64,000 nucleotides of DNA, taken from the IMG/VR virus record IMGVR_UViG_3300049215_000771, positions 186,001 to 250,000 of that record, one strand, 5' to 3'. The translations under genes were made by a program, and so were the position numbers. The notes under the pieces are model-generated. The model was given only the letters and a program-made list of their open reading frames with translations. It ran no database searches and was not told the origin of the DNA. Shown piece by piece: positions 28,666-43,788 of the stretch; positions within the stretch are counted from its first letter, which is position 1; every line of letters begins with the position of its first letter.

Positions 28666-28776
28666 TTCGGCGGCTGGCCGGGGGCTGCCCACTCCTGGCC
28701 TGGGCGCAATAGCCTACTGGTACAAACCTTCAAGTTGATGTTTTAGAGATTTGTACCCTACGGGCTGGAGGGAAGC

Positions 28777-28932: not shown

Positions 28933-28940
28933 GAGGGGAT

Positions 28941-29141
28941 ATGGACCCTGTTGCTTGCATCGAGGAAGCCGAGGCGCAGATCGAATCCAACAACCCGGAC
29001 GATGCTGCCTGGGCGCTTCAGGACTATCGGGAGTGGCGGCGCAAGGGTGGATTCACCGACGCCGGCCTGGACGAGCGTGCCCGGATTGTCAACAAGGAAA
29101 TCAAGCAGACCGGGCATCCTGGGGTGAACCTGGGATTTTGA
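28941..29141 (+). CDS. small hypothetical protein
   Basis: AGGAGG SD. Confidence 0.65.
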   Translation: MDPVACIEEAEAQIESNNPDDAAWALQDYREWRRKGGFTDAGLDERARIVNKEIKQTGHPGVNLGF

Positions 29142-29197
29142 TGAAAGTTTCCGAACCTTGCTGGCCCGGCAAGGTCTTCCATGCGGGAGGGGACGAC

Positions 29198-29332
29198 ATG
29201 AAGAAAACGAATCGTGTGCGTAAACATCGTAGGGACAAGAACAACGGCAAGAACGGTTGGGTGGGTGGAAATCCCCGCTACGACCGTCGCAAGGCGACCG
29301 AGGGAAAGAATCGGTCGATGGGCCGCAATTAG
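29198..29332 (+). CDS. small basic protein
   Basis: after motif B. Confidence 0.55.
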   Translation: MKKTNRVRKHRRDKNNGKNGWVGGNPRYDRRKATEGKNRSMGRN

Positions 29333-29344
29333 GGAGGGGCTGCA

Positions 29345-29590
29345 ATGCCTGTTTCGTTGAATCGTGTTCTGACCGTGGCGAAGGGCAACGGGGGCTTCCT
29401 GGACCGCCTGGGCATTGAGACGATTGCCAGGGAGGACCGGCTTCGCCTGTTGCTGGTTCGGTGTGGCAATGGTCGTTTCCTGGCCCCGGCGCAGGACGTG
29501 AACCATTTCATCGCCATCATCGAGCGAGACAACCAGGACTACATTCGGGACGTGTCGCTGCCGACTTCCGACCCGATCTGGAAAACCTGA
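29345..29590 (+). CDS. hypothetical protein
   Basis: GGAGG SD; stop abuts motif B. Confidence 0.65.
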   Translation: MPVSLNRVLTVAKGNGGFLDRLGIETIAREDRLRLLLVRCGNGRFLAPAQDVNHFIAIIERDNQDYIRDVSLPTSDPIWKT

Positions 29591-29657
29591 AAGTTTCCGA
29601 ACCTTGCTGGCCCGGCAAGGTCTTCCATGCGAGTCGAGACAACCTGGATAGGGAGAA

Positions 29658-30179
29658 ATGAACATGGTCACTTTCAGCAAGGGCGACAACATCATCGACA
29701 GCCGGGACGTGATTTCCCGCATCGAGGAGTTGGAGTCCGAGCGTGAAGCCTTGTCCGATGCCGTGGACAGCGCTCGTGAGGCGTTGGAGGAACACCAAAG
29801 CAACGAGCCGGACGAGGACGCCGACGAAGAAGTACACGAAGCGTACCAGGAGAAGCTGTCGGAGTTGAAGGAAGCGCTGGTCGAGGCGGCTTCCGACCTG
29901 GACGATTGGGACGAGGACGACGACCAGGGCGGCGAGTTGAAGGAGCTTCGGGCCTTCAGCGAGGAGGGCGAGAGCGCCACGTCGGACTGGCCGCACGGCG
30001 CAATGTGCATCCTGGAAAGCTACTTCGAGGACTACTGCCAGGAGTTGCTGGCCGACATCGGCGACTTGCCGAAGGACTTGCCGCATTACATCGTGATCGA
30101 CTGGACGGCCACGGCGAAGAACCTGGAGGCCGACTATTCGAGCATCACCTGGGGCGGCGAGACGTATCTGGTCCGCTGA
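29658..30179 (+). CDS. acidic ArdA-like antirestriction (DNA mimic) protein
   Basis: very acidic; C-terminus FEDY..ELL.D.G.LP..L..YI.ID....A..L..DY resembles ArdA. Confidence 0.6.
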   Translation: MNMVTFSKGDNIIDSRDVISRIEELESEREALSDAVDSAREALEEHQSNEPDEDADEEVHEAYQEKLSELKEALVEAASDLDDWDEDDDQGGELKELRAFSEEGESATSDWPHGAMCILESYFEDYCQELLADIGDLPKDLPHYIVIDWTATAKNLEADYSSITWGGETYLVR

Positions 30180-30252
30180 TCCCGAACCTTAGACCATTCG
30201 CCCCGGTCTAAGGTATGCGTCGAGTATCCATTACCCTGGTAGGGAGAGAGTC

Positions 30253-30429
30253 ATGCAAGCAACGGTCGAGGGCAACGAGTTGGTGGTTCGCATTCCGCTT
30301 CAGAAGCCGGCTCCGAGTTCGACGGGCCGCACCCTGATCGTGGCGAACAGTGGCGGGCCGAAGGCGACCGAGGCCGAGGTCAACGGCAAGAAGATCACGG
30401 TCAACCTGAGCGCCTGGATCAAGCCCTAA
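30253..30429 (+). CDS. small beta-rich hypothetical protein
   Basis: GGGAG SD; followed by terminator. Confidence 0.65.
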   Translation: MQATVEGNELVVRIPLQKPAPSSTGRTLIVANSGGPKATEAEVNGKKITVNLSAWIKP

Positions 30430-30555
30430 CGTGTGGGCAACCGGCCTGGGGGATGCAGCCGCCCCCAGGCCGTTTCTTTGCGATAGGGAGCAGGTACAAA
30501 CCTTCAAGTTGTAGCTTTATAGGTTTGTACCCTACCGGCCAGGAGGTAACGGACC

Positions 30556-30714
30556 ATGAAAACTGTCACGATGCCGAAGAAGCCGGACATGACGATTCGC
30601 CTGGAGCCGATCAAGATGCGGCTTCCCTTCGTGGGTCGGGGGCGCAAGACCCGGCACGAGCCTCGCAGGAGTCGGCGGGGCGACAAGCAACGGATGGCGA
30701 AGGAAAGTTTCTGA
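30556..30714 (+). CDS. small basic protein
   Basis: AGGAGG SD after motif A; stop abuts motif B. Confidence 0.6.
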   Translation: MKTVTMPKKPDMTIRLEPIKMRLPFVGRGRKTRHEPRRSRRGDKQRMAKESF

Positions 30715-30789
30715 AAAGTTTCCGAACCTTGCTGGCCCGGCGAGGTCTTCCATGCGAGAGACGAGACAACCCCCAACGGGAGATATGGA

Positions 30790-32400
30790 ATGGCTGCTTT
30801 CCTGAAGATTCAGAATCCTGGCGTTGCTGATCCCCTGGCCTTCACCCTCCTGGGTGCTTCCACGAGCCGGTCCAGCGACAACAGCGCCACCATCGGCAAG
30901 TTCGGGTCGGGCAACAAGCACGGTGTCGCCGTGTGTCTCCGTGAGGAGTTGCCGCCCGTTGTGTTCGCCGGCACGCTCCGCATGACGTTCGGCACGACCG
31001 ACGTGAAGATGGACGCCGGCACGCACAGCAAGACGTTCGCTCGTGTGCAGGTGAAGTACGGCGGCAAGGACAAGGCCGGCGTCAACCGTTCGTCCACGGA
31101 AGACCTGGGCTATGTCCTGGAGTACGGGGCTTCCGACTGGCTGGGCATCGACCTGGCGCTTCGGGAGTTCGTGTCCAACGCCATCGACCGGGCGATTGTG
31201 GAAGGCGAGATCGCTTTCATCGCCAAGTTCGCTTTCGAGTACAACGAGCGCAACCCCGGCTTCCACGCCCTCCTGGACCAGAAGGACGCCGAGGCGGTTT
31301 CCATCTGCCACAAGGCGCTGGAAACCTACCGGCTGACGGCGCAGGACTTCAAGAACGTCCGGGTCGAGGTCGTGGAGGAGAACCAGGTCCGGGCGAAGGA
31401 CGGCTACACCACGGTTTTCGTGCCGCTGAATGCCGACGTTCTGGCGTTCTACCAGTCGCTTGGCAAGTGGTTCCTGCACTTCTCGGAGCCGGAACTGCTG
31501 AACAAGACGATTCTGCCGAAGAAGAATCGCAACCTGGGCAACCGGGTCGCAGCGGTGATCTACCGTCGTGGTGTTCGTGTTCGGGAGTTCGAGAGCAGCG
31601 ACGTTCCTTCGCTGTTCGATTACAACCTGCCGAACATCGAACTGGATGAGGCACGCAAGGCCGACGACTGGCGGATTCGGACGGCGGCGGGCAAGGCCGT
31701 CCGTGATGCCGACCAGGACACGCTTCGGGTGCTGTTCCAGTCGTTCCGCAGCAGCCAGCGCTATTGGGAACACGACTTCGACACCTACGGCCTGGAAGTG
31801 TCGTCGTGGGAGACGGACAAGCCGGAAGCGGCTGCCGCCCGTCAGACCAACTGGCAGAAGGCGTTCGAGCAGGTTTTCGACGCCAACGCTGTGATCGCCA
31901 CGGCGACGGGCGGCGAGTTTGCCGAGCGGAAGGGTTACAACGTCATCACGGCCCCGGAGCCGTTCGTCAAGGCGGCTGGCAAGCATGGCGTTCGCACCCC
32001 GGAGAAGGTGTTGACGCAGGACGACCGGGAAGGGCGAGAGATCATCGACGCCACGCCGGACGCTCTTGCCGCCCTGGACTTCGTGTGGGACGTGGTTCAG
32101 CGCTCTGGCATGACCAACGGCAAGGAGCGCCCGGCCTGCAAGGTGTTCCGCAAGATCATGTCGGGAGGGTCGCAGACGTTGGGGTTCTACCGTGACGCCA
32201 CGGTGTACATCAACGAGGACATCGCCGGCTATGGTTCGCTGACGGGCGGCTGGCAGGTGTTGACGCAGCAGCTTCTCGTGACGGCGCTGGAGGAAGTGGC
32301 CCATCACGTTACGGGGGCGACCGACAACAGCCGGGACTTCCAGGACTACGTTCTGAACCTGGCGATCAAGCTGGCGAAGGTCCAGGCCGGCTTGATCTGA
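30790..32400 (+). CDS. GHKL-type ATPase with permuted motif order and degenerate zincin-like tail
   Basis: LLGAS...IGKFGSG.K precedes DW...LREFVSNAID; C-terminal EEVAHH. Confidence 0.7.
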   Translation: MAAFLKIQNPGVADPLAFTLLGASTSRSSDNSATIGKFGSGNKHGVAVCLREELPPVVFAGTLRMTFGTTDVKMDAGTHSKTFARVQVKYGGKDKAGVNRSSTEDLGYVLEYGASDWLGIDLALREFVSNAIDRAIVEGEIAFIAKFAFEYNERNPGFHALLDQKDAEAVSICHKALETYRLTAQDFKNVRVEVVEENQVRAKDGYTTVFVPLNADVLAFYQSLGKWFLHFSEPELLNKTILPKKNRNLGNRVAAVIYRRGVRVREFESSDVPSLFDYNLPNIELDEARKADDWRIRTAAGKAVRDADQDTLRVLFQSFRSSQRYWEHDFDTYGLEVSSWETDKPEAAAARQTNWQKAFEQVFDANAVIATATGGEFAERKGYNVITAPEPFVKAAGKHGVRTPEKVLTQDDREGREIIDATPDALAALDFVWDVVQRSGMTNGKERPACKVFRKIMSGGSQTLGFYRDATVYINEDIAGYGSLTGGWQVLTQQLLVTALEEVAHHVTGATDNSRDFQDYVLNLAIKLAKVQAGLI

Positions 32401-32529
32401 TCTTTCTCCCTGGGTTGGCCCGGTGGGGGAGCAATCCCCTGCCGGGCTTTTTTGTCAGCACAGGCCAGGTACAATCCTACAAGTGGATGTTTTAGAGATT
32501 TGTACCCTACCAGTCGGGAGGAAAAAACC

Positions 32530-32622
32530 ATGATTGCAGTCAAGTTGTTCATTGGGTTCTACGGCATGGCCATCGTGTCGGCCATCATCGCCTGGTTGAC
32601 CAATGGTGAACGAAAACAGTAA
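32530..32622 (+). CDS. small membrane peptide (30 aa)
   Basis: GGAGG SD, single TM, between motif A and motif B. Confidence 0.55.
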   Translation: MIAVKLFIGFYGMAIVSAIIAWLTNGERKQ

Positions 32623-32824
32623 AAGTTTCCGAACCTTGCTGGCCCGGCGAGGTCTTCTATGCGAAGGACACAACGCCGAACGAAAAGGGGGTTAGATGCA
32701 GCTTCTCACTTGTTTAGCTGAGGCTTGTAAGGAACCATGAGCCTCGAACAAGGTTCCCCCTACGCCGCCTGCGACGGCGTAGGATTGGCCTGCGATTTCA
32801 ACAACCCATACGGAGGAAAGTTTC

Positions 32825-33379
32825 ATGGTGATGCACGGTTCCGATCACGCCCTTCGCAGTCAGTTCAAGGTGGGCGACAAGGTTTATTTCGGTCGCAAAC
32901 GGGGCGAGAAAACGCTCGGCGAGATCGTCCGCTTCGGCCCGAAGAACGCCAAGGTCAAGCAGTTGGAGGATCGGGGTTCGATTCGGGATTATCCCATCGG
33001 CACGACCTGGACGGTCCCGCTCAAGCTGCTGACGCTGGCCACGGTGCAGTTTCCCGCCGACAAGCTGCCCAGCAGCGCTCCGCCCCCGCCCGTGAAGCGG
33101 GAGCCGTTGAAGTACAACCCGTTCGCCGGCATCGACAACCTGCTCCTGGAAGCCCTGGCGTCGGCCTACAGCGGCCTCAGCCCGGAGAACCTGACCTGTG
33201 ACGGCGAGGCCAGCGCCGCCCATGTCCAGGCCACCCGGACGCACCTGAATCGTGTCATTCGTGGCTGCAAGCTGGCCCTGAACCGTGATGATCTCGACGA
33301 AGGCGAGGTCTTCACCTGGCTGATGACCAAGCGGGACTATGAGCGCCAGCGGGCCGAGCGAAAATCGGCCACGGCCTAA
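32825..33379 (+). CDS. hypothetical protein (SH3/KOW-like N-terminus)
   Basis: FKVGDKV.F..G......K..KV. Confidence 0.65.
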   Translation: MVMHGSDHALRSQFKVGDKVYFGRKRGEKTLGEIVRFGPKNAKVKQLEDRGSIRDYPIGTTWTVPLKLLTLATVQFPADKLPSSAPPPPVKREPLKYNPFAGIDNLLLEALASAYSGLSPENLTCDGEASAAHVQATRTHLNRVIRGCKLALNRDDLDEGEVFTWLMTKRDYERQRAERKSATA

Positions 33380-33448
33380 GAAATTTCCGAACCTCCGCTC
33401 GCCCCGGAGGTCTTCCTTGCGGGCAACGACAACCATAGGGAGAAGGAC

Positions 33449-33895
33449 ATGAAGCATATCGACGACCTGATGAAGTCGCAACAGGGCGAGCGCAACCCAG
33501 GGCAGCACATCGGCAAGTTCCTGTTGGAACATTCCAACTCGCCGGAATACCTGGTGAGCCAACTGTCGGCCTACCTGGAAGCGGCCCAGGCCGACCTGGA
33601 AGCCGAGCGAGCGATGTTTCGGCGTCTCACGAAGCGGCCCGACCCGCCGAAGCCCACCAAGTTCGCCGTCGTGCAGGTGAAGGGCGGGGCGTCCAACGCC
33701 CTGGGGACGAGCGGGCCGGTCCAGGTCTGCCAGTACAAGCAGGACGCACAAGACCTGGCGGTGAAGATCGCCCTTGAGGGGTTGACCGAGCCTGGTGATC
33801 CGGGCGAGGCCGAGGTTCGCAAGGAAATCTTGGAAACGGGAGGCTACATCGACAACAGCGGCGAGTGGGCCGTGTGCATCGAGAGCATCGAGTAA
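33449..33895 (+). CDS. hypothetical protein
   Basis: after motif B. Confidence 0.7.
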   Translation: MKHIDDLMKSQQGERNPGQHIGKFLLEHSNSPEYLVSQLSAYLEAAQADLEAERAMFRRLTKRPDPPKPTKFAVVQVKGGASNALGTSGPVQVCQYKQDAQDLAVKIALEGLTEPGDPGEAEVRKEILETGGYIDNSGEWAVCIESIE

Positions 33896-34094
33896 CAACA
33901 ACGAAGGGAGAGGTACTGTGGGCATTCAGCAGTACAACTAACGAGGCGTTGAACCTACGCCTACAACCCAACCGGCCAGGCATCCCCTGGCCGGTTCTGC
34001 TTGCGACACCATCTTGGTACAAACCTTCAAGTTGATGTTTTAGAGGTTTGTACCCTACGAGTCGGAAGGCAAGAAACCTCATAGGGAGAACGAC

Positions 34095-34379
34095 ATGGCT
34101 GCTGCACTGTCCACCGCCGAGAACCTGAACACCGTGGCCCGCTCCTGCCTGTTGGTGGCGGCTGCCCTGACCGACCCGAAGGACGAGACGCCGTACACCT
34201 TCAGGAAGGTCACGATCAAGGGCGAGGGCCACTTCCGCTTCACCCAGCGCATCCTGGTGAACGGCGAACTGGTCGAAGTGACCGTTCGCACCCTGAAGGA
34301 TGAGAGCCGGGGCGAGGGGCTGGCATCCCCGGAGAATGTCGAGCGCTTTCTCGACAACGTGATGCCGTCGATTTCCTGA
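34095..34379 (+). CDS. hypothetical protein
   Basis: after motif A; stop abuts motif B. Confidence 0.7.
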   Translation: MAAALSTAENLNTVARSCLLVAAALTDPKDETPYTFRKVTIKGEGHFRFTQRILVNGELVEVTVRTLKDESRGEGLASPENVERFLDNVMPSIS

Positions 34380-34444
34380 AAGTTTCCGAACCTCCGCTCG
34401 CCCCGGAGGTCTTCCTTGCGAGACAACCATAGGGAGGGCGAAAG

Positions 34445-34645
34445 ATGGAAGTTGATTTCACGGTCGAGAACCACGGCTCGATCTGGATGTTCACGCCCCT
34501 GACCGAGCGGGCCAGGAACTTCACCGCCACGGACCTGAACGTGGAAGGTTGGCAGTGGATGGGCAATTCCTTCGGGGTCGATCACTCGGTCGCCCCGCAA
34601 CTGGTGTCGGCGCTGATCGACGAAGGCTTCGAGGTCCAGGAGTAA
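34445..34645 (+). CDS. hypothetical protein
   Basis: after motif B. Confidence 0.7.
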   Translation: MEVDFTVENHGSIWMFTPLTERARNFTATDLNVEGWQWMGNSFGVDHSVAPQLVSALIDEGFEVQE

Positions 34646-34680
34646 CCATGCTATTCTTCCTGTTGGTGGGCCTGTTCACG

Positions 34681-34960
34681 GCCCGCCTACAGGAGCCGGT
34701 TCTGCTGAGAGCAACCGTTGTTCTGCCAGGGGCGAATCCCCAAGCAAACAACCCTCCAGCCGTAGCTCGCTGCTACACGAGCGGCTTCCTGTAGGTCGGG
34801 CGGCGTGAGGCCGCTAAGGTTATCGGGCCGGACCTGGCGAAGTCGGCCCTATGGCGAATGGCATTCAACCTGGGGTATCCCCCGCATGTGGACCAGCGGT
34901 TTTCTCTAGCAGTAGCCACACCTACTTACATTGAGGGGCGGGGAACGCCAACCCGTCCGC
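34681..34960 (+). ncRNA. candidate structured RNA
   Basis: 18-bp long-range stem 34681-34698 with 34782-34801, plus further hairpins. Confidence 0.4.
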
Positions 34961-34991
34961 TGCGTTGCCGAGCTATATCTTCATAGGGAGA

Positions 34992-35258
34992 ATGACCATG
35001 CCAAGCGTGAAGGGGACGGGCAAGCCGAACATTCGCCAGGCCATCGAGTTGACCCGCCAGGCCGACAACTTGCTGGAAGACATTCGCAACCACTTCGATA
35101 TGGAGTGGGGCGACGGCCAGAACACCGACCTGGACCTGGCCCTGTCGAGCGCTATCCGCAACCTGGCGGAAGCCCGCAGCGAACTCGACAAGGTTCTGGA
35201 CAAGTTCCAGGGCCGGGCGCTGAAGCCCAACTACCCCCGCAAGCGGCGGGCTTCCTGA
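34992..35258 (+). CDS. hypothetical helical protein
   Basis: GGGAG SD; stop abuts motif B. Confidence 0.7.
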   Translation: MTMPSVKGTGKPNIRQAIELTRQADNLLEDIRNHFDMEWGDGQNTDLDLALSSAIRNLAEARSELDKVLDKFQGRALKPNYPRKRRAS

Positions 35259-35328
35259 AAGTTTCCGAACCTCGCTGGCCCGGCGAGGTCTTCCTTGCGA
35301 GCAACGACAACCATAGGGAGGACTGAAC

Positions 35329-35583
35329 ATGGCCCAGGCCGATCTCGTGCCCGATCAGAACGTGAACTTTCCCGCCGACCGCAAGCTGGACCATCACGAC
35401 GGCAAGCGGTACAGCAAAGCCTGTGGGTTCAGTGCTAACCCGGCGACTTCCGAGCAGGACAACAAGCCCATCATCCAACTGTGGCAGATCAACAGCAAGG
35501 GCAACCTGTCCCGCTGCTACCTGTCCATTCCCATCGAGAGCGTGGACGACGTGATCGCCCTGCTGCAACGGACAAAATCTTGA
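35329..35583 (+). CDS. hypothetical protein
   Basis: flanked by motif B copies. Confidence 0.7.
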   Translation: MAQADLVPDQNVNFPADRKLDHHDGKRYSKACGFSANPATSEQDNKPIIQLWQINSKGNLSRCYLSIPIESVDDVIALLQRTKS

Positions 35584-35651
35584 AAGTTTCCGAACCTCCG
35601 CTCGCCCCGGAGGTCTTCCTTGCGGGTAACGACAACCATAGGGAGAACGAG

Positions 35652-35870
35652 ATGAGCAAGTATCTGACGGTCGTTCCGGCCTACGGGCGTGACTACAAGA
35701 GCCAGAAGGAAGTCAAGGAGGCGTGGGCGGCGGGCCATGACTTTCTGATCGCCGACGCCTCCAGCCCCGACAACGGGCGTTACGTCAACAAGGACGACGC
35801 CGTGAAGGGCATCACCTTCAACATCCGGTACAAGGGCAACACTGAGGTCTGTGTCATCAAGGCCAAGTGA
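35652..35870 (+). CDS. hypothetical protein
   Basis: after motif B; TVVPAYGRDYKS. Confidence 0.7.
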   Translation: MSKYLTVVPAYGRDYKSQKEVKEAWAAGHDFLIADASSPDNGRYVNKDDAVKGITFNIRYKGNTEVCVIKAK

Positions 35871-35970
35871 GTGCTGGACTGCTAGTGGTGCTAGTCCCTA
35901 ACTCGCAAACCACCAAGGGGGTGCAAAGCCCCCGCTGCGAAACCATCAACCCCATACGGAGAATCGACTC

Positions 35971-36363
35971 ATGGCGAAAACGATCAAGCGAAAGCCGGCC
36001 AAGAAGGTGAAGGGGCCGGATTGGGCGGCGCTCAAGGCGACGGTGCTGGCGACTCCCATCGACGTGCTGAAGAAGGCGATCCAGGTGGACGGCTGGACGA
36101 TCTACGAGCCGAGCAAGTTCACGGACGCCGGCCTGGATGCTTCGGTCGTGGCGGCGTTCTCCCGCAACATCAAAAGCGACACCCGTGACCCCAAGTCCAC
36201 GATCTTCGGGAGCCAGGGCCAGGTCATCAAGGAGTTGCAGGGCGTGTACGGCCTCGAACTGCTGGAGTTCATCGCCCGCTGCTTCGACGTGCATTCCGAC
36301 AAGTCCGGGCGTGGCTTCCGCCAGGGCCACTTGACCGAGCAGCTTTACGCCATCTGGAAGTAA
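35971..36363 (+). CDS. hypothetical protein
   Basis: stop abuts motif B. Confidence 0.7.
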   Translation: MAKTIKRKPAKKVKGPDWAALKATVLATPIDVLKKAIQVDGWTIYEPSKFTDAGLDASVVAAFSRNIKSDTRDPKSTIFGSQGQVIKELQGVYGLELLEFIARCFDVHSDKSGRGFRQGHLTEQLYAIWK

Positions 36364-36440
36364 TTTCCGAACCTCCGCTCGCCCCGGAGGTCTTCCTTGC
36401 GAGTGACGAAACCATCAACTTGATAGGGAGGGATTGAACC

Positions 36441-36647
36441 ATGTGGAGTCCTGAATCGCTTTCCACGCTGAACGCCTTGGCCTCGAAGGTCGGCAGCCGT
36501 GAGGCACACCGGCTGTTTACCAGCCGCCTCCGGTCGGATACCGACAAGGCCAACGCCATCCTCGCCGGCCAGTCGAAGGTCTGTGACTCGTGTGGCGACG
36601 GCTGCCCGGTCGCCAGTCTCGCCGAGGCCGATTCCGAGGCAGCGTGA
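36441..36647 (+). CDS. hypothetical protein
   Basis: flanked by motif B copies. Confidence 0.65.
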   Translation: MWSPESLSTLNALASKVGSREAHRLFTSRLRSDTDKANAILAGQSKVCDSCGDGCPVASLAEADSEAA

Positions 36648-36720
36648 GAAATTTCCGAACCTCCGCTCGCCCCGGAGGTCTTCCTTGCGAGTGATGACAA
36701 CCATAGGGAGGATTGAAATC

Positions 36721-37068
36721 GTGACGAGCCAAACCTTCAAGCTGCCTTCGTTCCGTTCCTACGGCAACTACAGCAGCGAGAACTACGGGGCGCATTGCCT
36801 CGTGATCGACTTCGGGCCGGTGACGGTCTGGTTCAGCTACAAAACGCCCATCGCCTTTCACGTCGAGGGGCATAGCCGGGTCGTGCTGAAGAACTACTGG
36901 TCCACCACGACCGGCAAGCACCTGAACGCCATCGACGGCGGCAACAAGAAGGGCCGGGTCGATCAGGAGACGTTCGACCGGCTGTGGGCCGAGCAGGTGG
37001 AGGCAGTGTTCAACCCGCAGCCCAAGTCCGACCCGGACAGCCCCTTCAACGTGGGGGCGCTGAACTAA
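36721..37068 (+). CDS. conserved phage hypothetical protein
   Basis: FSY.TPIA ... WS.TTGKHLN. Confidence 0.7.
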   Translation: MTSQTFKLPSFRSYGNYSSENYGAHCLVIDFGPVTVWFSYKTPIAFHVEGHSRVVLKNYWSTTTGKHLNAIDGGNKKGRVDQETFDRLWAEQVEAVFNPQPKSDPDSPFNVGALN

Positions 37069-37135
37069 CGAGTACGGCATGGAGCCGGGCAACTTCGCCC
37101 GGCTCTTTTTTGTGAAGCATCATAGGAGAGAAACC

Positions 37136-37453
37136 GTGTTCCCGACCCCGACCGACCGCCGAGGCGTGCATGGCGCTGCCCGGCCTGCCTTCACCGTCCA
37201 TCGCTTCAAGCGGACCATTTGCCTTCTGCTGAATGAGGAGATGGCCGAGGAGATCAACACCTTGCTGGTGGCGAACGAGCAACGGCTGGAGAACGCCCCC
37301 GGCCTGAAGCGTGTGCCTCCGTTCCTGTACGAGTTCACCACGCAGCTTCAGGAGGCGCTCGACCAGCCGCCCCCGGCCAAGGGTGAGAAGCCCGAAACGC
37401 TCGCTCCGGGCCGTCCCCGGCCTCGCCAAAACCCCGCTGTGAAGGCTGTCTGA
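37136..37453 (+). CDS. hypothetical protein
   Basis: AGGAG SD, GTG start. Confidence 0.6.
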   Translation: MFPTPTDRRGVHGAARPAFTVHRFKRTICLLLNEEMAEEINTLLVANEQRLENAPGLKRVPPFLYEFTTQLQEALDQPPPAKGEKPETLAPGRPRPRQNPAVKAV

Positions 37454-37510
37454 AGTTCGGTGTGCCATGCCCAGGCACACCCTTGCGACATCCAACATAG
37501 GGGGCTTACC

Positions 37511-37705
37511 ATGACGATGAAGTACATACTCCTGAAGGTCGAGATCGAACACGAGCCGGACGCCGAACCTGATGACATTGCCGCCGAGGTCGAGGTTCAC
37601 TATGATGACACGGATGGAAGCATCACCAAGTCCGAGGTCGTTGCTGTGGGGAATTCCCCTGGCCTGCTTCGCTACATCAGCGACAAGCCGAAGCCGAAAA
37701 GTTAG
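37511..37705 (+). CDS. small acidic protein
   Basis: ORF with SD. Confidence 0.6.
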   Translation: MTMKYILLKVEIEHEPDAEPDDIAAEVEVHYDDTDGSITKSEVVAVGNSPGLLRYISDKPKPKS

Positions 37706-37878
37706 AGGATTGTACCTGCACTGTCGGCTAAAGGTTGAGTGGCCCAGCCCGGCGCAAGCTGAAGCTGGGCCTCCCATATTCTCCCAAGCAGGCCAGGTCA
37801 GCCCTGGCCTGCTTCTCCCTGCGCCCAGCCTGTACAAATCTCAAAATATCACCATTAGACCATTGTACCCTAGCGGTT

Positions 37879-38051
37879 GCCTCCGCAACGCTCTAAGCCG
37901 AGAGGCGGGTAAACCTTGAAACCTGGATGCCAGTCCTGGCGGTAGGGGTGAGCGTGATTAGGCCAATTACACCCGACTGGCTTCAATGCCTGCATCGGTC
38001 CTGGCAGACTGGTGTGCCGTGGTGGTGTGGGTTCGAGTCCCACCGGAGGCT
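37879..38051 (+). ncRNA. tRNA-like RNA (acceptor stem and T arm with ~140-nt insert)
   Basis: GCCTCCG (37879-85) pairs with CGGAGGC (38044-50); T arm GTGGG-TTCGAGT-CCCAC; 5' end 7-8 nt after TACCCT of motif A. Confidence 0.7.
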
Positions 38052-38145
38052 GCAATTTTCTTTGGGATTTTGCGAACCTTGAAGACTTGCCAGCGTCTTC
38101 TATGCGTAACGAGTCGAAACCATCAACCTGTAGGGAGAATCGAAC

Positions 38146-38403
38146 ATGGCGAAGTGTATCGTGACCGTGAACCCGAAGCGTGGTCGTCCGGCGATCTTCG
38201 TTGGCGTCCTGAAGACCAACATCGTCCGTCTGCTCCGGGCGCACGGCCTGGTGAAGACCCAGCGCATCCTGGCATCCGAGGGCGTCAGCGCCAAGGTCGG
38301 GGCGAAGAAGTCCCCGGTCAAGATCAGCCTGCCGACCCTGAGCAAGCTGGCGACCGAGGCCGGCATCGAGTTCAAGCGTGGTCGCCCGGCACTGGCGGCG
38401 TGA
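38146..38403 (+). CDS. basic DNA-binding protein with two AT-hooks
   Basis: KRGRP near both termini. Confidence 0.65.
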   Translation: MAKCIVTVNPKRGRPAIFVGVLKTNIVRLLRAHGLVKTQRILASEGVSAKVGAKKSPVKISLPTLSKLATEAGIEFKRGRPALAA

Positions 38404-38490
38404 GCCACTAAGGGCGAGGGGTAGCGGTGTGGAACGCAATGACCCCCTCGCCCCCAAACTTGCGAGCTATATCTTCATAGGGAGAATGCC

Positions 38491-38796
38491 GTGGCTGCCG
38501 CTTTGGACAAAGAAATCAGCTTCCACCTTGACCGGGCCGCAACGCTGGCCCGTGCTGAGGTCGAGCGCCTGGCCCGCAAGCTGCTCCGGGAACACCCCAA
38601 CCTTGAAGCCTTCATCATGGCGATGGGGTTGGCGACGTTCAGCGTCAAAGGCCAGGCCGACAGCCTGGCCCTGTACGAACGGAAGTATTTCAAGCCCCTG
38701 GAAGACTTCATTGTGAAGTGGGACAGCGCCCTGGGGCTGACGGGTGATCCCATGTGGATTGAAGGGCCGGACGGCGAGATCAAAACGGAGTGGTAG
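38491..38796 (+). CDS. hypothetical protein
   Basis: ORF with SD. Confidence 0.65.
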   Translation: MAAALDKEISFHLDRAATLARAEVERLARKLLREHPNLEAFIMAMGLATFSVKGQADSLALYERKYFKPLEDFIVKWDSALGLTGDPMWIEGPDGEIKTEW

Positions 38797-38848
38797 TTAG
38801 AGGTTTGTACCCTACAACCTGGGCAACGAACCATAGGGAGACAAGACC

Positions 38849-39091
38849 ATGAAGTTTCTGCCGACCATCACCCTGACCGATGCCGTGTATGCGGCTCTCC
38901 GCAACGGCCAGCTTCGCCTCCAGTGTGGGCAGTGGATTCGTATTCCTGGCGACCCGCCTGGCGTGACCAGCAAGCCCAGCCGCTTCGTCAAGGCGAGCCG
39001 GGTTCACCTGGACATCGTACACCCTGACGGGCCGTTCGCCACGGGCCGGGTGAGCAACGAGCGTTTCAAGACCAGGGCGAAAAATCGTTGA
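38849..39091 (+). CDS. hypothetical protein
   Basis: after motif A half; stop abuts motif B. Confidence 0.7.
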   Translation: MKFLPTITLTDAVYAALRNGQLRLQCGQWIRIPGDPPGVTSKPSRFVKASRVHLDIVHPDGPFATGRVSNERFKTRAKNR

Positions 39092-39160
39092 AAGTTTCCG
39101 AACCTCCGCTCGCCCCGGAGGTCTTCCTTGCGAGCAACGACAACCATAGGGAGACAAGTC

Positions 39161-39640
39161 ATGCTGCATGATTGTTCGCACGATGGGTGCAAGGTCGGCG
39201 GCTGCATCAAGCTGGAAGTCCTGGTCGCCCCCGACTACGAGAAAGACCCGCAACGCTTCAAGTGGTTCTGTGAAGCCCACGCCGAGGCGTTCGAGGCCGA
39301 CCTGGAGAAGCGCCACGACTACGCCAAACGGGTCGAGGTCATCCCGGTCGTGGGCATGGGAGCGACGGCGGGCTATGGCAGCGACCGTTACCCGTACACG
39401 GTCATCAAGGTCAGCACCAACGGCAAGACCATCACCGTGCAGGCCGACGACTACAAGCCGGCCCCTGGCCATCACTACATCAACAACCAGGTGTATACCT
39501 ATACTCCGAACCCGCAGGGCGAGACGAAGGTTTTCACCCTCCGGGACAACGGGCGCTGGGTGTTGAGGGGCGAGAGCAAGCAGGGCGGGCTGTGCCTGGG
39601 CCTGGGCGTTCGCCGCCACTACCATGACCCGTCGTTCTGA
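39161..39640 (+). CDS. conserved phage hypothetical protein
   Basis: VGMGAT..YGSDRYPYTVI ... G.R..Y.DPSF. Confidence 0.75.
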   Translation: MLHDCSHDGCKVGGCIKLEVLVAPDYEKDPQRFKWFCEAHAEAFEADLEKRHDYAKRVEVIPVVGMGATAGYGSDRYPYTVIKVSTNGKTITVQADDYKPAPGHHYINNQVYTYTPNPQGETKVFTLRDNGRWVLRGESKQGGLCLGLGVRRHYHDPSF

Positions 39641-39774
39641 CGTACACTAAGACTTGGGGGTGGGTGGATAGTTTGCAAAAGCCCTGGGCGCAAGTCCAGG
39701 GCGAACCCCCACTGCGTTAAGCCTTTGTACCCTCCAGGATGGGACGAAGGGCATCACAAAGGGAGGATGAGGAA

Positions 39775-40041
39775 ATGACGCTGAGACGGAAACTCTTCAA
39801 CGGCATTACGCTGTGGCTGGGGATGTACGCCATCACGGTGTTCATCTACTGGTTGAAGGTGGGCCACTTCTACGACGGCCTGCTGTTCGCCCTGATGACG
39901 GCGAGCGCCAAAACGGTCTGGAGCCTGGTCCACAAGGCCATCACCCACCGGGAGCCGAGCAAGGTCATCATCACCGAAGAAGCGCTGCCCACGTCGGCCC
40001 AGCTTGAGGCCGAGGTCTGTGATTGCAAAGAAGCTGCTTGA
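39775..40041 (+). CDS. small membrane protein (DUF2061-like topology)
   Basis: two TM segments. Confidence 0.5.
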   Translation: MTLRRKLFNGITLWLGMYAITVFIYWLKVGHFYDGLLFALMTASAKTVWSLVHKAITHREPSKVIITEEALPTSAQLEAEVCDCKEAA

Positions 40042-40045
40042 ACGA

Positions 40046-40130
40046 CGGCACGGCCAGGCCAAGAGGTAGGCCATTCCGACAACTGGTTGCCTACGCTAGT
40101 TGTCGAAATGCTCTTGGCCCGGCACGGCCA
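40046..40130. mobile_element. miniature inverted-repeat element flanked by 11-bp direct repeats
   Basis: CGGCACGGCCA direct repeats abut a 63-bp unit with 9-bp terminal inverted repeats GGCCAAGAG/CTCTTGGCC. Confidence 0.45.
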
Positions 40131-40265
40131 AAACTGGTCCTGCAAACAGGGTAAGTGGGGCGGCAGCGGGCCGTTCCCCACCAGTTTTTTGCGACTATAG
40201 CCCGGTACAAAGGTCAAGAGCTATATCTTTGACCTTTGTACCCTATGGGGCAAAGGAGGGCTGCG

Positions 40266-40562
40266 ATGGAAACTTTCGATAAGGCCGAATGGCGGCGACA
40301 AGGGGGCATGACCCCGCACGGTCGCTACGTTCCGACAACCAGCACAGGGCGCAAGGTTGTGGCGAAAGCACACCGGCCACCCCTGAAGGGTGAGGTTTAC
40401 CTGAAGCCTTCGGGTCGGCGTGGCATCTACCTGGTGTTGACTGCTCAGAACGACTTCGCCCGGCGTTCGTACACCATCGTTCGTGTGGTCAAGGGCGAGA
40501 GCGAGGCAAGGGCGCATTGGGAACAGGCCCGGCGTGACTACCTCCGAATTACTGGAAGATAA
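40266..40562 (+). CDS. hypothetical basic protein
   Basis: after motif A; stop abuts motif B. Confidence 0.65.
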   Translation: METFDKAEWRRQGGMTPHGRYVPTTSTGRKVVAKAHRPPLKGEVYLKPSGRRGIYLVLTAQNDFARRSYTIVRVVKGESEARAHWEQARRDYLRITGR

Positions 40563-40613
40563 TTCCGAACCTTGCACGCCCAGCGAGGTCTTCCTTGCGA
40601 GGAGGGCAGAACG

Positions 40614-40844
40614 ATGAAACAAATGGACCATGCGGCTTATCAACGCAAGTGCCGTGGTCTGCCAGAAGCGTCCCTTCGCTACATCTTGAAGGATGCGAAG
40701 GAAGCTATCGACGCCCAACCGTTCGGCGAGAACGCTGGTTACTACGCCGATGAAATCCACTACGCTGCAATGGAGTTGCGACGGCGAGGCCAGGAGGCCA
40801 GCGACCTTCCCCCACTTGTGAAGGACATAGGGATCAAATCATGA
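40614..40844 (+). CDS. conserved phage hypothetical protein
   Basis: L.YI..DA.EA ... G.Y.DE.HY...EL.RR. Confidence 0.7.
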   Translation: MKQMDHAAYQRKCRGLPEASLRYILKDAKEAIDAQPFGENAGYYADEIHYAAMELRRRGQEASDLPPLVKDIGIKS

Positions 40845-41344
40845 ACGTGGAACTTGTGAAGCGTCTGTTCGCCCACTTCGCCCCCGCCCCCGAAGTCAAG
40901 ATCGACAAGTACAGCGAGGATGGCTGTTGCCCTGCCATCATCATCGGCCCCTTCACCATCAGTCAGTCGCTTACCGTCGTCAAGGGGCTGAAGGGCGACC
41001 ACGAGGTTCCCAACTACAGCCTGGACGTTCACGTTGGCGACGGCGACATTATCGACCTGGCGACTGCCACGAACTTCGCCGACGTGGTTGTGGCTGCCGT
41101 CGAGAACTACGCCGGCTGGCTGGCACGGGCTGAACTGGACCGCATCGCTGACGACGCCTATGCCGCTGACCTGGAGAGCGAGCGTCTGGCCTTGCAAGCC
41201 GCCTTCAACGAGGGGCTGGAATACTACAGGACGACTGCCCCCGGCGAGCGTAGCAAGGACGCCAACCCCTACCCCCACGGCATCGAGCATTACTACAAGT
41301 GGGCGTCCGGCTACAGCCAGGGCGAGGCGGAAGCGGTGTTTTGA
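40841..41344 (+). CDS. hypothetical protein
   Basis: ATGA overlap. Confidence 0.7.
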   Translation: MNVELVKRLFAHFAPAPEVKIDKYSEDGCCPAIIIGPFTISQSLTVVKGLKGDHEVPNYSLDVHVGDGDIIDLATATNFADVVVAAVENYAGWLARAELDRIADDAYAADLESERLALQAAFNEGLEYYRTTAPGERSKDANPYPHGIEHYYKWASGYSQGEAEAVF

Positions 41345-41460
41345 CCTTTGTACCCTGTCGGTTGTCGAGGCCGGGCCGGACGAAAAAAGTTTCCGAACCT
41401 TCAACGTCCGGCCCGGTCTTCCTGGTGGGCAACGAACTCTTCAACGAAAGGCAGGTTGCG

Positions 41461-42117
41461 ATGAACACTTTCCGAGCCGGCAGCGACCAGTCCCAGCGTT
41501 TCATCAACGAGGGGCGGCGTCGTGAGAAGCAGATTGCGGACGCCTTGAAGAAACAGCACGGCCTGAACCTGGTCGAGCCGACTGACGCCGAAGACCGTTA
41601 CCAGAAGATCGACCGCTGGCTGGTCGAGGGCGACAAGCGGACGGCGGTTCAGATCAAGTACAGGGAGAGCGGCGACGACTTGCTGGTGGAAGTGTTCGAC
41701 CGTTGGCACGGTTGGGACCATCCCCGCAACAAAACGGGCCGGGACGTGGTTGGCGATAGCAAGCTGTACGCTGTGCTTCGCCTGGACCGGGAAACCGTCG
41801 TTCTCACCAGCGCCGCCATCCTCAAGGGGATTGTGCAGGAGATGGTGACGGCAGCGCAGGCGACGGGCTGGACCGTGGACCGTGGCACGCACAGCAAAGT
41901 CCTCCGCTACTTCAAGGCGGGTGGGTGCTGTGAGTTGAAGGTCCAGTCCGACCCCAACGACGGCAGGCCGAAGATGGTTGCATACATCCCGGCCAACGTC
42001 CTGATCTTCGAGCAGCAGGCCGAGGTCTACAAGGTCCGCCTGCCTGCCGACTGGTCAGGAGAGGGCAAGAAGAAGGAACGGCCACGCCGCACCGACCTTC
42101 GGGGCGGCACGAACTAG
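41461..42117 (+). CDS. PD-(D/E)XK nuclease-like protein
   Basis: G..RE ... D....ID ... VQIKYR. Confidence 0.6.
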   Translation: MNTFRAGSDQSQRFINEGRRREKQIADALKKQHGLNLVEPTDAEDRYQKIDRWLVEGDKRTAVQIKYRESGDDLLVEVFDRWHGWDHPRNKTGRDVVGDSKLYAVLRLDRETVVLTSAAILKGIVQEMVTAAQATGWTVDRGTHSKVLRYFKAGGCCELKVQSDPNDGRPKMVAYIPANVLIFEQQAEVYKVRLPADWSGEGKKKERPRRTDLRGGTN

Positions 42118-42239
42118 GCTAGTAGCAGGGACAACCAGGAGCAGCGACGGCTGACTCCTGGCCCCTGCGAACGCTGCGTTAGACCATTGTACCCTAGTTC
42201 GATGTGAGCTATATCTTCAACCTGGATATGGAGAAAGTC

Positions 42240-42887
42240 ATGGGTCGCAAACTGGTGGTGCGAATCGAACACGATTCCGACGTTGAAGTGCCGGACAGCG
42301 GGTATGACGGCTGGAAGCTGGTGTCCTTCGGACGCCGGCACAGCAACTACGAAGACCCCGACAACTACATCAAGGGCGTGAACGAGTTCCGGGAAATCAC
42401 CCCGGCCAACATCGGCCTTCGCCGCAAGCTGAACGTCGGCCTGGCCTTCTGGCTGTCCTACTACGAACACAGCCTTGGTTGCTGGTCCCTCAAGGGCGAA
42501 GGTCCGCAATGCCAGTGGGACACGGCGCAACTGGCCGGCATCCTGCTGTGGACCGGCAAGCCCGGCGACATTGGAGCGAAGACCCTGGAGGATCGGGCGA
42601 AAGATGCTCGCTGCTTCCTGGAGAGCTACAACGATTGGGCTAACGGCAACTGCTACTGGTACAGCGTCGAGAAAACGGACGGCACGGACGTTGAGAGCGT
42701 CGGCGGGTTCATCGGCGAAGAAGCTGTGAACGAGGCGCTGGCCGAAGTCCTTGAGGCCGGCGACGTTGTGACCGTCGAAGGTGACGCCGCCTGGACCTTC
42801 GACGCACCGGAAGGCGTCGAAGTGGTGGACGAACACGAGGAGGACGAGGAGGAGGAAGCGACGGTCAGCGACGGTGCAGGCATCTGA
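42240..42887 (+). CDS. acidic hypothetical protein
   Basis: GGAG SD; acidic tail. Confidence 0.7.
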   Translation: MGRKLVVRIEHDSDVEVPDSGYDGWKLVSFGRRHSNYEDPDNYIKGVNEFREITPANIGLRRKLNVGLAFWLSYYEHSLGCWSLKGEGPQCQWDTAQLAGILLWTGKPGDIGAKTLEDRAKDARCFLESYNDWANGNCYWYSVEKTDGTDVESVGGFIGEEAVNEALAEVLEAGDVVTVEGDAAWTFDAPEGVEVVDEHEEDEEEEATVSDGAGI

Positions 42888-43209
42888 CACGACAAGCCCC
42901 AGGCTGGCCCGGCCTGGGGCATTTTGGGAAATCCCCATCAGGTACAAACTTTCAAGTTGATGTTTTAGGCCATTGTACCCTAGCGGTTGGCCCGATGGCT
43001 GCCGGTGGCACGGTGGCATCGGACAACCTTCTGACGGCTCTAGGGGTAAGGGGCCGTATGGGGTTGCTGTGCTTGTGCGTTCGTCGCCACAACGACGCAT
43101 CGGCCTGCAATCTTTGCAACCATCCGTCAGAATTCTTGAAAGTTTCCGAACCTTGTTGGTTCGGCGCAGTCTTCCTTGCGGGTAGGACAGTCATACGGAG
43201 AATCGAGTC

Positions 43210-43575
43210 ATGTTGAAGCATCGTGTTGCGGTTATCATCCCCTCCACCGTCAAGGGCAACGAGCCGGCTCCTGCCGACCTGGTTGCCAAGTGGGTCAAGG
43301 CGGCGAAGATCAAGCTGGGAACCCTGTTCGGTGGCTTCACTGCCACGAAGGGCGAAGGCGGCTGGGTTTCCCCCGTCCACGGCTTGATTGAAGAGCCGGT
43401 CACTGTTGTCGCCGCCCACTGTGACGAAGAGGCTTTCAACCGTCACGCCCAGGACGTTCGTGAATTCGCCTTGACCGTCGCCGTGGCGCTGGAGCAGGAA
43501 GCCGTTTCCGTCCAGTTCGACAACACGCTGGAATTCGTCAGCGTGCCGCCCGCCGTCGCCGTCAACGTGGTCTGA
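43210..43575 (+). CDS. DUF3574/SAM-lyase-like protein
   Basis: FGG.T...G.GGW ... IEE...V ... EQEAV. Confidence 0.5.
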   Translation: MLKHRVAVIIPSTVKGNEPAPADLVAKWVKAAKIKLGTLFGGFTATKGEGGWVSPVHGLIEEPVTVVAAHCDEEAFNRHAQDVREFALTVAVALEQEAVSVQFDNTLEFVSVPPAVAVNVV

Positions 43576-43788
43576 TCGGAAGGCCAGGGTCGCCCACCCT
43601 GGCCTTTGTTGGTAATACCCTACAGGTACAAAGGCTGAAGCGTTGCTTTAGAGGTTTGTACCCTAGTGGTCGGGTGAAAACCCTCGCAACAACAATCCTG
43701 GGCGGCGAGCGCCGGCCCTTGTAAGTTTCCGAACCTTGTGGTCTTGTGAAGCGTCTTCCCTGCGAAGCATACGGAAAGGACAATAACC

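What the first reader, a model, noticed from the sequence alone, without database searches (positions are those of the whole stretch)
37879..38051. 172-nt tRNA-mimic RNA with its own promoter
A perfect 7-bp acceptor stem (GCCTCCG/CGGAGGC) stacks on a canonical T arm (GTGGG-TTCGAGT-CCCAC). The D and anticodon region is replaced by ~140 nt of other helices: CTCT/AGAG; GCCAGTC/GACTGGC enclosing GGGT/ACCC and GTGATT/AATTAC; CTGC/GCAG. There is no encoded CCA, and the discriminator would be U. The 5' end coincides with the predicted start of the motif A promoter. The top-half-only architecture recalls tmRNA's tRNA-like domain and bacterial Y RNAs, but it matches neither in size. It is a candidate decoy for tRNA-targeting defences or a novel ncRNA class.
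Basis: partly seen in the sequence, partly recalled or inferred. Interest (0 to 1): 0.75.

Follow-up and report, generated by a model that had tools for sequence, protein, structure and literature searches.

The report
Anticodon-less tRNA-Thr mimic RNA in megaphage
A 173-base stretch behind its own phage promoter in a half-megabase phage keeps the upper half of the phage's threonine tRNA but has no working anticodon arm, and it is almost unchanged in three strains whose flanking DNA differs by 10-25%, so it is probably a working tRNA-like RNA of unknown role.

Summary
The core observation holds. GCCTCCG (37879-37885) pairs perfectly with CGGAGGC (38044-38050), directly next to a canonical T arm (38027-38043). 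The discriminator is T and no CCA is encoded. ARAGORN and Rfam report no tRNA, tmRNA or other family here.

New findings:
- The acceptor stem, T stem and discriminator are identical to the phage's own tRNA-Thr(GGU).
- The 3' 64 nt is a decayed copy of that tRNA.
- In two other haplotypes the 173 nt show 1 and 0 changes, while the flanks show 48/235 and 24/235.
- The recurring promoter motif A ends exactly at the first base. A second promoter-like motif B lies between the element and the next gene.
- In a relative, a true tRNA-His sits in the same promoter-to-ORF position.

No read evidence exists for a discrete RNA. More distant orthologous loci lack the element.

The host genome is a 533-kb megaphage with about 59 tRNAs, a truncated ThrRS, and SmpB without a detectable tmRNA.

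Verdict: a real, constrained, tRNA-Thr-derived, non-decoding tRNA mimic. It is a new variant of a known kind. Its function, decoy or otherwise, is untested.

The parts
37741..37812 (+). Two GC-rich hairpins (37741-37771 and 37788-37812) after the upstream gene (37511-37705). They probably terminate or insulate upstream transcription.
   Evidence: Read directly from the sequence. The second hairpin keeps its pairing through changed bases in L016 and L036. The simple terminator scan did not call either hairpin.
37855..37879 (+). Promoter motif A, TTAGACCATTGTACCCTAGCGGTTG. Its last base is base 1 of the element.
   Evidence: There are 4 copies within 3 mismatches where none is expected, and 10 copies within 5 mismatches, all on the + strand between window 27442 and 47219. 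Four of them lie 25-35 nt before a start codon. The same motif precedes genes in relatives. The transcription start site is inferred, not measured.
37879..37885 (+). 5' acceptor strand, GCCTCCG.
   Evidence: Identical to the 5' acceptor strand of the phage tRNA-Thr(GGU) at genome 17758-17830. Pairing probability is 0.83-1.0 when the 173-nt RNA is folded alone.
37886..37987 (+). Inner domain of 102 nt with unresolved structure. The only variable site among the three haplotypes is 37964, which falls in the predicted apical loop.
   Evidence: No Rfam match, no second copy in the genome, and folding no better than shuffles.
37988..38026 (+). Decayed tRNA-Thr body: the old 5' acceptor copy GCCTGCA (37988-37994), a D-arm-like hairpin (37992-38015, loop CTGGCA), a GGU anticodon remnant (38011-38013), and a mini-hairpin (38016-38026).
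   Evidence: Among the 56 phage tRNAs, the best global alignment is to tRNA-Thr(GGU), score 21 against 10 for the next best. RF00005 gives 15.8 bits and the mascRNA model 24.7 bits, both below their cut-offs. Hairpin probability is 0.54-0.95.
38027..38043 (+). T arm, GTGGG-TTCGAGT-CCCAC.
   Evidence: Together with the 3' acceptor strand and the discriminator it matches, base for base, the 3' end of the tRNA-Thr(UGU) gene in two Gemmatimonadales MAGs.
38044..38051 (+). 3' acceptor strand CGGAGGC plus the discriminator T. No CCA is encoded.
   Evidence: The phage's own tRNA-Thr genes also lack an encoded CCA.
38070..38106 (+). Promoter-like motif B (TTGCGAACC ... GTCTTCTATGCG), lying between the element and gene 38146-38403.
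   Evidence: About 45 plausible copies (with GGTCTTC 13-18 nt downstream) among 59 core matches genome-wide; those checked lie about 40 nt before starts. The phage encodes two sigma-70-family proteins. Reading the motif as an ECF-type -35/-10 pair rests on my own knowledge.
38146..38403 (+). Downstream gene of 85 aa, with no known family. It was used as the synteny anchor.

Best explanation
The element is a functional, non-decoding tRNA mimic that evolved from a copy of the phage's tRNA-Thr(GGU) gene.

Proposed mechanism:
1. Transcription starts at or a few bases before G37879, driven by promoter motif A.
2. The 5' end pairs with 38044-38050 and stacks on the T arm. This gives a 12-bp threonine-type acceptor/T minihelix, probably with a D-like hairpin at the elbow, and it closes a roughly 100-nt inner domain.
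3. The 3' end is made the way the phage's other CCA-less tRNAs are finished, by 3' trimming and CCA addition. This releases a stable RNA of about 173 nt (plus CCA) from any read-through transcript.
4. Lacking an anticodon arm, the RNA cannot decode. It most likely acts by occupying or recruiting a factor that reads the upper half of tRNA-Thr. Candidates are the phage's truncated ThrRS, the CCA enzyme, EF-Tu, processing RNases, or a host enzyme that attacks the acceptor end.

What is shown: the sequence anatomy, the tRNA-Thr origin, the promoter adjacency, and the strong conservation of the block. What is inferred: the start site, the folding, the processing, and the target.
For: - Acceptor stem, T stem and discriminator are identical to tRNA-Thr(GGU). 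The 3' 64 nt aligns best to that tRNA out of 56. The D stem carries a two-sided change (T-A to G-C) that keeps pairing.
- T arm, 3' strand and discriminator are untouched (an exact 25-nt match to real bacterial tRNA-Thr genes), whereas the anticodon arm is destroyed. This is not the pattern of random decay.
- Against L016 the element has 1/173 changes versus 48/235 in the flanks (p = 1e-11) and 34/261 in the adjacent CDS (p = 3e-7). Against L036 it has 0/173 versus 24/235 (p = 1e-6). Conservation starts at motif A and ends at 38053.
- The single change, at 37964, lies in a predicted loop.
- The 51-aa ORF across the element is frameshifted by an indel at 38054/55 in L016 and L036, so the constraint is not protein-coding.
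- The relative L021 has promoter, then a 26-nt leader, then a true tRNA-His, then 20 nt, then ATG. A tRNA slot in a leader is therefore native to this phage group.
- The acceptor and T arm appear in the MFE of the isolated RNA.
Against: - There is no transcript evidence for the element.
- There is no covariation. Only three near-identical haplotypes were found, and scans of IMG/VR and of JGI metagenomes found no others.
- The conservation could reflect a recent recombinational sweep of the block rather than long-term selection.
- When the 100 nt downstream are included, the acceptor and T-arm pairing probability falls to 0.01-0.02.
- No intrinsic terminator follows the element.
- Overall stability is no better than shuffled sequence.
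- Loci around more distant homologues of the downstream gene (L017, L019-L025) lack the element.
- A distal perfect 7-mer can arise by chance, as at genome 176739.
Confidence: 0.45

Rival explanations
1. The element is a cis-acting leader module. It is the 5' part of the motif-A mRNA for gene 38146. Its tRNA-like 3' end serves as a processing or stability signal (tRNA punctuation by RNase P/Z/E), not as a trans-acting RNA.
For: - No terminator lies between the element and the gene.
- At three other sites, motif A is followed by motif B 50-80 nt later and then a gene, so A transcripts normally run into genes.
- L021 has a tRNA inside a 5' UTR.
- A second anticodon-less tRNA-like sequence lies 27 nt before a start codon at genome 176835-176905.
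Against: - The gene has its own motif B, and the locus of its homologue in L017 manages without the element.
- All 173 nt are conserved, not just the 64-nt tRNA-like part.
- This reading is not exclusive with the best explanation, because processing would also release the RNA.
Confidence: 0.25
2. The element is a tRNA-Thr pseudogene. A ~100-nt insertion with a duplicated target (GCCTCCG ... GCCTGCA) disrupted a tRNA-Thr gene. The near-identity among strains comes from recent recombination or hitch-hiking.
For: - There are two copies of the 5' acceptor strand, one of them decayed.
- The anticodon arm is collapsed.
- The element occurs in only one narrow lineage.
- The fold is not unusually stable.
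Against: - The contrast between 0-1 changes in 173 nt and 10-25% divergence immediately on both sides appears in two comparisons.
- Decay is selective: the T arm and 3' strand are perfect and the D stem is compensated.
- The distal 5' strand is perfect and sits at the predicted transcription start.
Confidence: 0.17
3. The element is a minimal tmRNA-like partner of the phage SmpB. It would be a top-half tRNA mimic that enters stalled ribosomes with SmpB, charged with Thr rather than Ala.
For: - The phage encodes SmpB (186.9 bits).
- Neither ARAGORN nor four Rfam tmRNA models find a tmRNA in the 533-kb record.
- The element has an acceptor and a T arm and no anticodon arm.
Against: - The third acceptor pair is C3-G70, not the G3-U70 alanine determinant.
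- No convincing resume codon or tag frame was found by inspection.
- It keeps a D-like stem, which tmRNA lacks.
- RF00023 does not match it.
- About 140 kb of the original 673-kb scaffold could not be searched.
- SmpB could simply use the host tmRNA.
Confidence: 0.04
4. The element is a true tRNA-Thr with a large intron, spliced to give a decoding tRNA, like the intron-bearing tRNAs reported in megaphages.
For: - This genome has many tRNAs with 12-48-nt insertions near the anticodon loop.
- Lak megaphages have highly conserved tRNA 'introns', including one in tRNA-Thr (10.1101/356790).
Against: - ARAGORN allowing introns up to 3000 nt finds nothing. At lowered thresholds it finds only models with broken stems.
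- No pair of exons rebuilds an anticodon stem-loop.
- RF00005 scores 15.8 bits against a cut-off of 29.
Confidence: 0.03

Closest known systems
Phage T4 RNAC (species 1 RNA), a small stable RNA of unknown role
   Same: - It is phage-encoded, longer than a tRNA, and does not decode.
- My scan of the T4 tRNA region found a canonical T arm (CCGGG-TTCGAAT-CCCGG) followed by a 7-nt strand whose partner lies 67 nt upstream.
- Its function is still unknown (PMC3014915; PMC9697503).
   Different: - T4 RNAC lies inside the tRNA cluster and is co-transcribed with tRNAs.
- Its acceptor-like closure is not made by the RNA's 5' end.
- No sequence relationship to this element was tested.
- The element here has its own promoter, sits in an accessory gene region, and is traceable to tRNA-Thr.
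Megaphage tRNAs with 'enigmatic', highly conserved introns (Lak phages, Devoto et al., 10.1101/356790)
   Same: - Huge phage genome.
- A tRNA frame interrupted by a long insertion.
- The insertion is nearly identical across strains.
- One reported case is a tRNA-Thr whose insertion itself looks tRNA-like.
   Different: - In those cases the exons still predict a full tRNA with an anticodon. Here they do not.
- The phage lineage and base composition are different.
tmRNA tRNA-like domain
   Same: - Acceptor stem plus T arm without an anticodon arm, closing a large inner region.
- The partner protein SmpB is encoded by this phage.
   Different: - C3-G70 instead of G3-U70.
- About half the usual length.
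- No tag frame, and no match to the tmRNA models.
Bacterial and phage Y RNA YrlA
   Same: A non-coding RNA that mimics the tRNA acceptor, D and T arms. Some members are cut by RNase P and receive CCA (PMC4201824).
   Different: - YrlA is encoded next to Ro60, and no TROVE gene is present in this phage.
- In YrlA the RNA ends form the Ro-binding stem, not the acceptor stem.
- There is no Rfam match here.
mascRNA / MEN-beta tRNA-like RNAs
   Same: A small tRNA-like fold with a reduced anticodon arm. This model gave the best, though sub-threshold, Rfam hit, over 37997-38050 (24.7 bits, E = 0.013).
   Different: - It is a vertebrate family.
- The score is below the 42.5-bit cut-off.
- The alignment uses a poorer 5' strand than the distal GCCTCCG.

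Membership tests
tRNA (including intron-bearing) | Full cloverleaf with an anticodon stem-loop, recognised by tRNA models | tested here: not met
   ARAGORN finds no gene in the window and none at this place when introns are allowed. It finds only broken models at 70-90% thresholds. RF00005 gives 15.8 bits against a cut-off of 29.
tRNA (including intron-bearing) | 7-bp acceptor stem stacked on a 5-bp T stem with a TTCRANY loop | tested here: met
   The arm is identical to real tRNA-Thr genes.
tmRNA | G3-U70 alanine identity pair in the acceptor stem | tested here: not met
   The third pair is C37881-G38048.
tmRNA | Match to tmRNA covariance models or ARAGORN tmRNA detection | tested here: not met
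tmRNA | Internal tag reading frame with a resume codon and a stop | tested here: inconclusive
   Reading the three frames by eye gave only short frames without tag-like ends. No statistical test was possible.
tmRNA | SmpB partner available | tested here: met
   PF01668 scores 186.9 bits at genome 107580-107993. The ORF is 143 aa.
Y RNA (YrlA) | Encoded near a Ro60/TROVE gene and matched by the YrlA model | tested here: not met
   No TROVE gene in the 533-kb record. No Rfam hit with E up to 10.
mascRNA-menRNA | Score at or above the Rfam gathering threshold | tested here: not met
   24.7 bits against 42.5.
Megaphage tRNA with conserved insertion | Insertion-bearing tRNA frame that is almost invariant between strains | tested here: met
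   description of the family.
Megaphage tRNA with conserved insertion | Removing the insertion restores a complete tRNA | tested here: not met
Discrete small RNA gene | Defined 5' and 3' ends seen in RNA data | tested here: inconclusive
   The RNA-run contigs cover only 38354-38607 and short pieces near 39200, not the element. Contigs can show presence but not absence.

The most novel reading that the evidence does not exclude
The RNA receives CCA and is charged with threonine, possibly by the phage's own editing-domain-less ThrRS. It then works as an anticodon-less aminoacyl-tRNA mimic. It could be the first non-alanine, tag-less tmRNA-like partner of a phage SmpB, or a sacrificial substrate that absorbs host defence enzymes aimed at the tRNA acceptor end.
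Probability: 0.07. Interest if true: 0.85.

Novelty: new variant of a known kind. Interest (0 to 1): 0.55.

Why it matters
Huge phages carry large tRNA sets and translation genes, and the oddities among these, such as conserved tRNA insertions and T4 RNAC/RNAD, have stayed unexplained for years. This element is a clean case for study. Its origin (tRNA-Thr GGU) is traceable, it has lost decoding capacity while keeping the part of a tRNA that enzymes read, it has its own promoter, and it is strongly constrained. If it is processed and charged, it would show that phages evolve tRNA mimics for purposes other than decoding. It would also give a direct handle on which host or phage factor is being targeted.

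Tried and rejected
- **Rfam:** at gathering thresholds and at E up to 10, only sub-threshold mascRNA and tRNA hits.
- **Homologue hunts:**
  - blastn against phages found nothing.
  - Three IMG/VR pattern scans found nothing.
  - A promoter 18-mer scan gave two chance hits in AT-rich phages.
  - The one JGI metagenome scan gave one unrelated, eukaryote-looking tRNA locus.
  - The GTDB scan gave only ordinary tRNA-Thr genes.
- **Synteny through flanking proteins:** 9 homologues of the downstream gene were found. Only L016 carries the element, and L036 was then found through the upstream gene.
- **Distant megaphage relative LR756511 (35% aa identity):** no element in the syntenic 31 kb.
- **Read laying:** no coverage of the element in RNA runs. 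Run X17 is an L016-like strain.
- **Leader homology:** a possible link to other motif-A leaders through the shared GGTAGGGGTRAGC is not significant (12 of 300 shuffles score as well).
- **Coding explanation:** rejected because of an indel in the only + strand ORF.
- **attP idea:** rejected because the element lies mid-genome and no integrase context was seen.
- **Complex prediction with SmpB or ThrRS:** not run, because RNA jobs give no verdict and I do not claim binding.

Full report
**What is in the sequence.**
Positions 37879-37885 (GCCTCCG) and 38044-38050 (CGGAGGC) are perfectly complementary. The 3' strand directly follows a canonical T arm, GTGGG-TTCGAGT-CCCAC, at 38027-38043. T38051 would be the discriminator, and no CCA follows. 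ARAGORN finds no tRNA or tmRNA in the window, and Rfam finds nothing at gathering thresholds. With permissive thresholds there are only sub-threshold hits to the 3' part: mascRNA-menRNA at 24.7 bits over 37997-38050, and tRNA at 15.8 bits over 37988-38051.

**Genome context.**
The window lies in a 532,729-bp IMG/VR virus record, cut from a 673-kb moss-metagenome scaffold. The record carries:
- about 59 tRNA genes in arrays far from this locus;
- two sigma-70-family genes, and no T7-type RNA polymerase hit, although the controls for that search did not ring either;
- SmpB;
- a ThrRS lacking the N-terminal part of the thrS profile, residues 1-170, presumably the editing region.

The closest catalogued relative of a neighbouring protein is a 595-kb uncultured huge phage, LR756511.

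**Origin of the element.**
The acceptor stem, T stem and discriminator are identical to the phage's own tRNA-Thr(GGU) at genome 17758-17830. The T arm, the 3' strand and the discriminator match the tRNA-Thr(UGU) genes of two Gemmatimonadales MAGs base for base.

The last 64 nt align best to tRNA-Thr(GGU) among the 56 phage tRNAs. This stretch contains:
- a decayed copy of the 5' strand (GCCTGCA, 5 of 7 positions);
- U8;
- a D arm, GGTC-CTGGCA-GACT, with one two-sided compensatory change;
- G26;
- a GGU remnant of the anticodon;
- about 7 nt missing from the anticodon arm.

The anticodon arm is what has been lost. The perfect 5' strand lies 109 nt upstream of the decayed one. That arrangement looks like an insertion with a duplicated target, or a partial duplication.

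**Promoter.**
The 25-nt motif A ends on base 1 of the element. It recurs 10 times, all on the + strand, between window positions 27442 and 47219. In four cases it lies 25-35 nt before a start codon, which makes it a promoter with a start near its 3' end. Relatives carry the same motif before nearly every small gene.

I noticed a second motif, B: TTCCGAACC, then 15-17 nt, then GGTCTTCC. About 45 plausible copies occur among 59 core matches genome-wide; those checked lie roughly 40 nt before starts. One copy lies at 38070-38106, between the element and gene 38146. The element therefore sits between two promoter-like sites. Where transcription starts and stops was not measured.

**Conservation.**
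I used homologues of the flanking proteins to fetch syntenic contigs.
- Two further haplotypes carry the element.
  - L016: 1 change in 173 nt, at 37964, in a predicted loop.
  - L036: 0 changes in 173 nt.
- The flanks differ far more: 48/235 columns in L016 and 24/235 in L036. Fisher p is 1e-11 and 1e-6.
- In L016 the adjacent coding sequence differs at 34/261 columns.
- The conserved block runs from motif A to 38053, which matches the proposed RNA.
- An indel at 38054/55 frameshifts the only + strand ORF across the element, so the constraint is not protein-coding.
- Loci around more distant homologues of the downstream gene lack the element (L017, L019-L025). It is therefore a lineage-specific insert in that leader.
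- In L021 the order is: a motif-A-type promoter, a 26-nt leader, a genuine tRNA-His, 20 nt, then an ORF. A tRNA slot in a leader is thus normal for this phage group.

**Structure.**
Folded alone, the 173 nt place the acceptor and T arm in the MFE, with acceptor pairing probability 0.83-1.0. There are several caveats:
- The total energy is no better than shuffles (z = -0.55).
- The inner domain is not unusually stable.
- Adding the next 100 nt abolishes the tRNA-like pairs in the model.
- With three near-identical sequences, no covariation test is possible.
- A distal perfect 7-mer is expected about once by chance among this genome's T-arm-like sites. One probable chance case exists at genome 176739, where the partner lies inside a coding sequence upstream of a terminator.

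The case for the long-range stem therefore rests on its identity to tRNA-Thr, its position at the predicted transcription start, and the conservation of the block.

**Known families.**
- Not a tRNA with an intron.
- Not a tmRNA: the third pair is C3-G70, no model matches, and no tag frame is evident. The phage does have SmpB without a detectable tmRNA in 533 kb, and 140 kb of the scaffold could not be searched, so a small probability remains.
- Not a Y RNA: there is no TROVE gene, and the architecture differs.
- Closest analogues:
  - T4 RNAC, an unexplained phage stable RNA in which I found a T arm with acceptor-like closure.
  - The highly conserved 'enigmatic' tRNA insertions of Lak megaphages.

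**Conclusion.**
The element is most likely a functional, non-decoding mimic of the upper half of tRNA-Thr, released by tRNA-type processing. Its target is unknown. A cis-acting leader or processing role, or a recently spread pseudogene, remain serious alternatives.

Noticed in passing
window 26706-43727 (+) and genome-wide; for example 36365, 36653, 38070, 39096: Motif B, (A)AAGT-TTCCGAACC-N15-17-GGTCTTCC(T/A)TGCG. About 45 plausible copies among 59 core matches genome-wide; those checked lie roughly 40 nt before starts. It resembles an ECF-sigma -35 GAAC / -10 GTCT promoter (my own knowledge). The spacer is often an inverted repeat whose arms covary (CCTCCG/CGGAGG, CCTTGC/GCAAGG, CCTCGC/GCGAGG). 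The phage encodes sigma-70-family ORFs of 179 and 336 aa.
   Followed up: partly
window 42990-43143 (+): A second long spacer (about 155 nt) between a motif A and a motif B. It is strongly structured in prediction (-61 kcal/mol), its 5' and 3' ends are complementary, and it shares TAGGGGTAAG and CTGCAAT with the element's surroundings. It may be another promoter-driven non-coding RNA.
   Followed up: partly
window about 26000-48000: An island of about 60% GC in a genome of about 52% GC. It is packed with short + strand ORFs that have GC3 of 0.8-0.9, almost all without a known family, and it holds all the motif A copies.
   Followed up: partly
genome G000:C1 871-995, 4872-4971, 6212-6337, 14780-14905, 34759-34889 (outside the window): Five tRNA-like genes with different acceptor stems share a conserved insert of about 45 nt in the anticodon-arm region: AGTCTCAGCGCCAATTTGTCCT(A/T)CGGGAATGCTTAGTTGGGATTACAT. 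Other tRNAs have unrelated inserts of 12-36 nt.
   Followed up: partly
genome G000:C1 107571-108002 (outside the window): The phage encodes SmpB (143 aa, 186.9 bits), but ARAGORN and four Rfam tmRNA models find no tmRNA in the 533-kb record.
   Followed up: partly
genome G000:C1 176835-176905 (outside the window): A 71-nt tRNA-like sequence with a GGGA tetraloop in place of the anticodon loop. It sits right after an intrinsic-terminator-like hairpin and 27 nt before a start codon.
   Followed up: partly
genome G000:C1 about 462527-463753 (-) (outside the window): A 408-aa ThrRS (thrS equivalog, 452.7 bits) that covers only profile positions 171-549, so it lacks the N-terminal region. SerRS-like, HisRS-like and GlyRS-like fragments are also present.
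   Followed up: partly
genome G000:C1 121393-121540, 80837-80930, 25614-25717 (outside the window): Candidate suppressor tRNAs with anticodons CUA (two copies), UCA and UUA. No alternative genetic code was needed or used for the window's genes.
   Followed up: no
window 38146-38403 (+): The 85-aa product carries two KRGRPA repeats (AT-hook-like) and ends in ALAA, the same last four residues as the E. coli ssrA tag (my own knowledge). It has no Pfam or PHROG family.
   Followed up: no
L021 2386-2531: In a relative's contig, a true tRNA-His(GTG) lies inside a 5' UTR: a motif-A-type promoter, a 26-nt leader, the tRNA, 20 nt, then ATG.
   Followed up: yes
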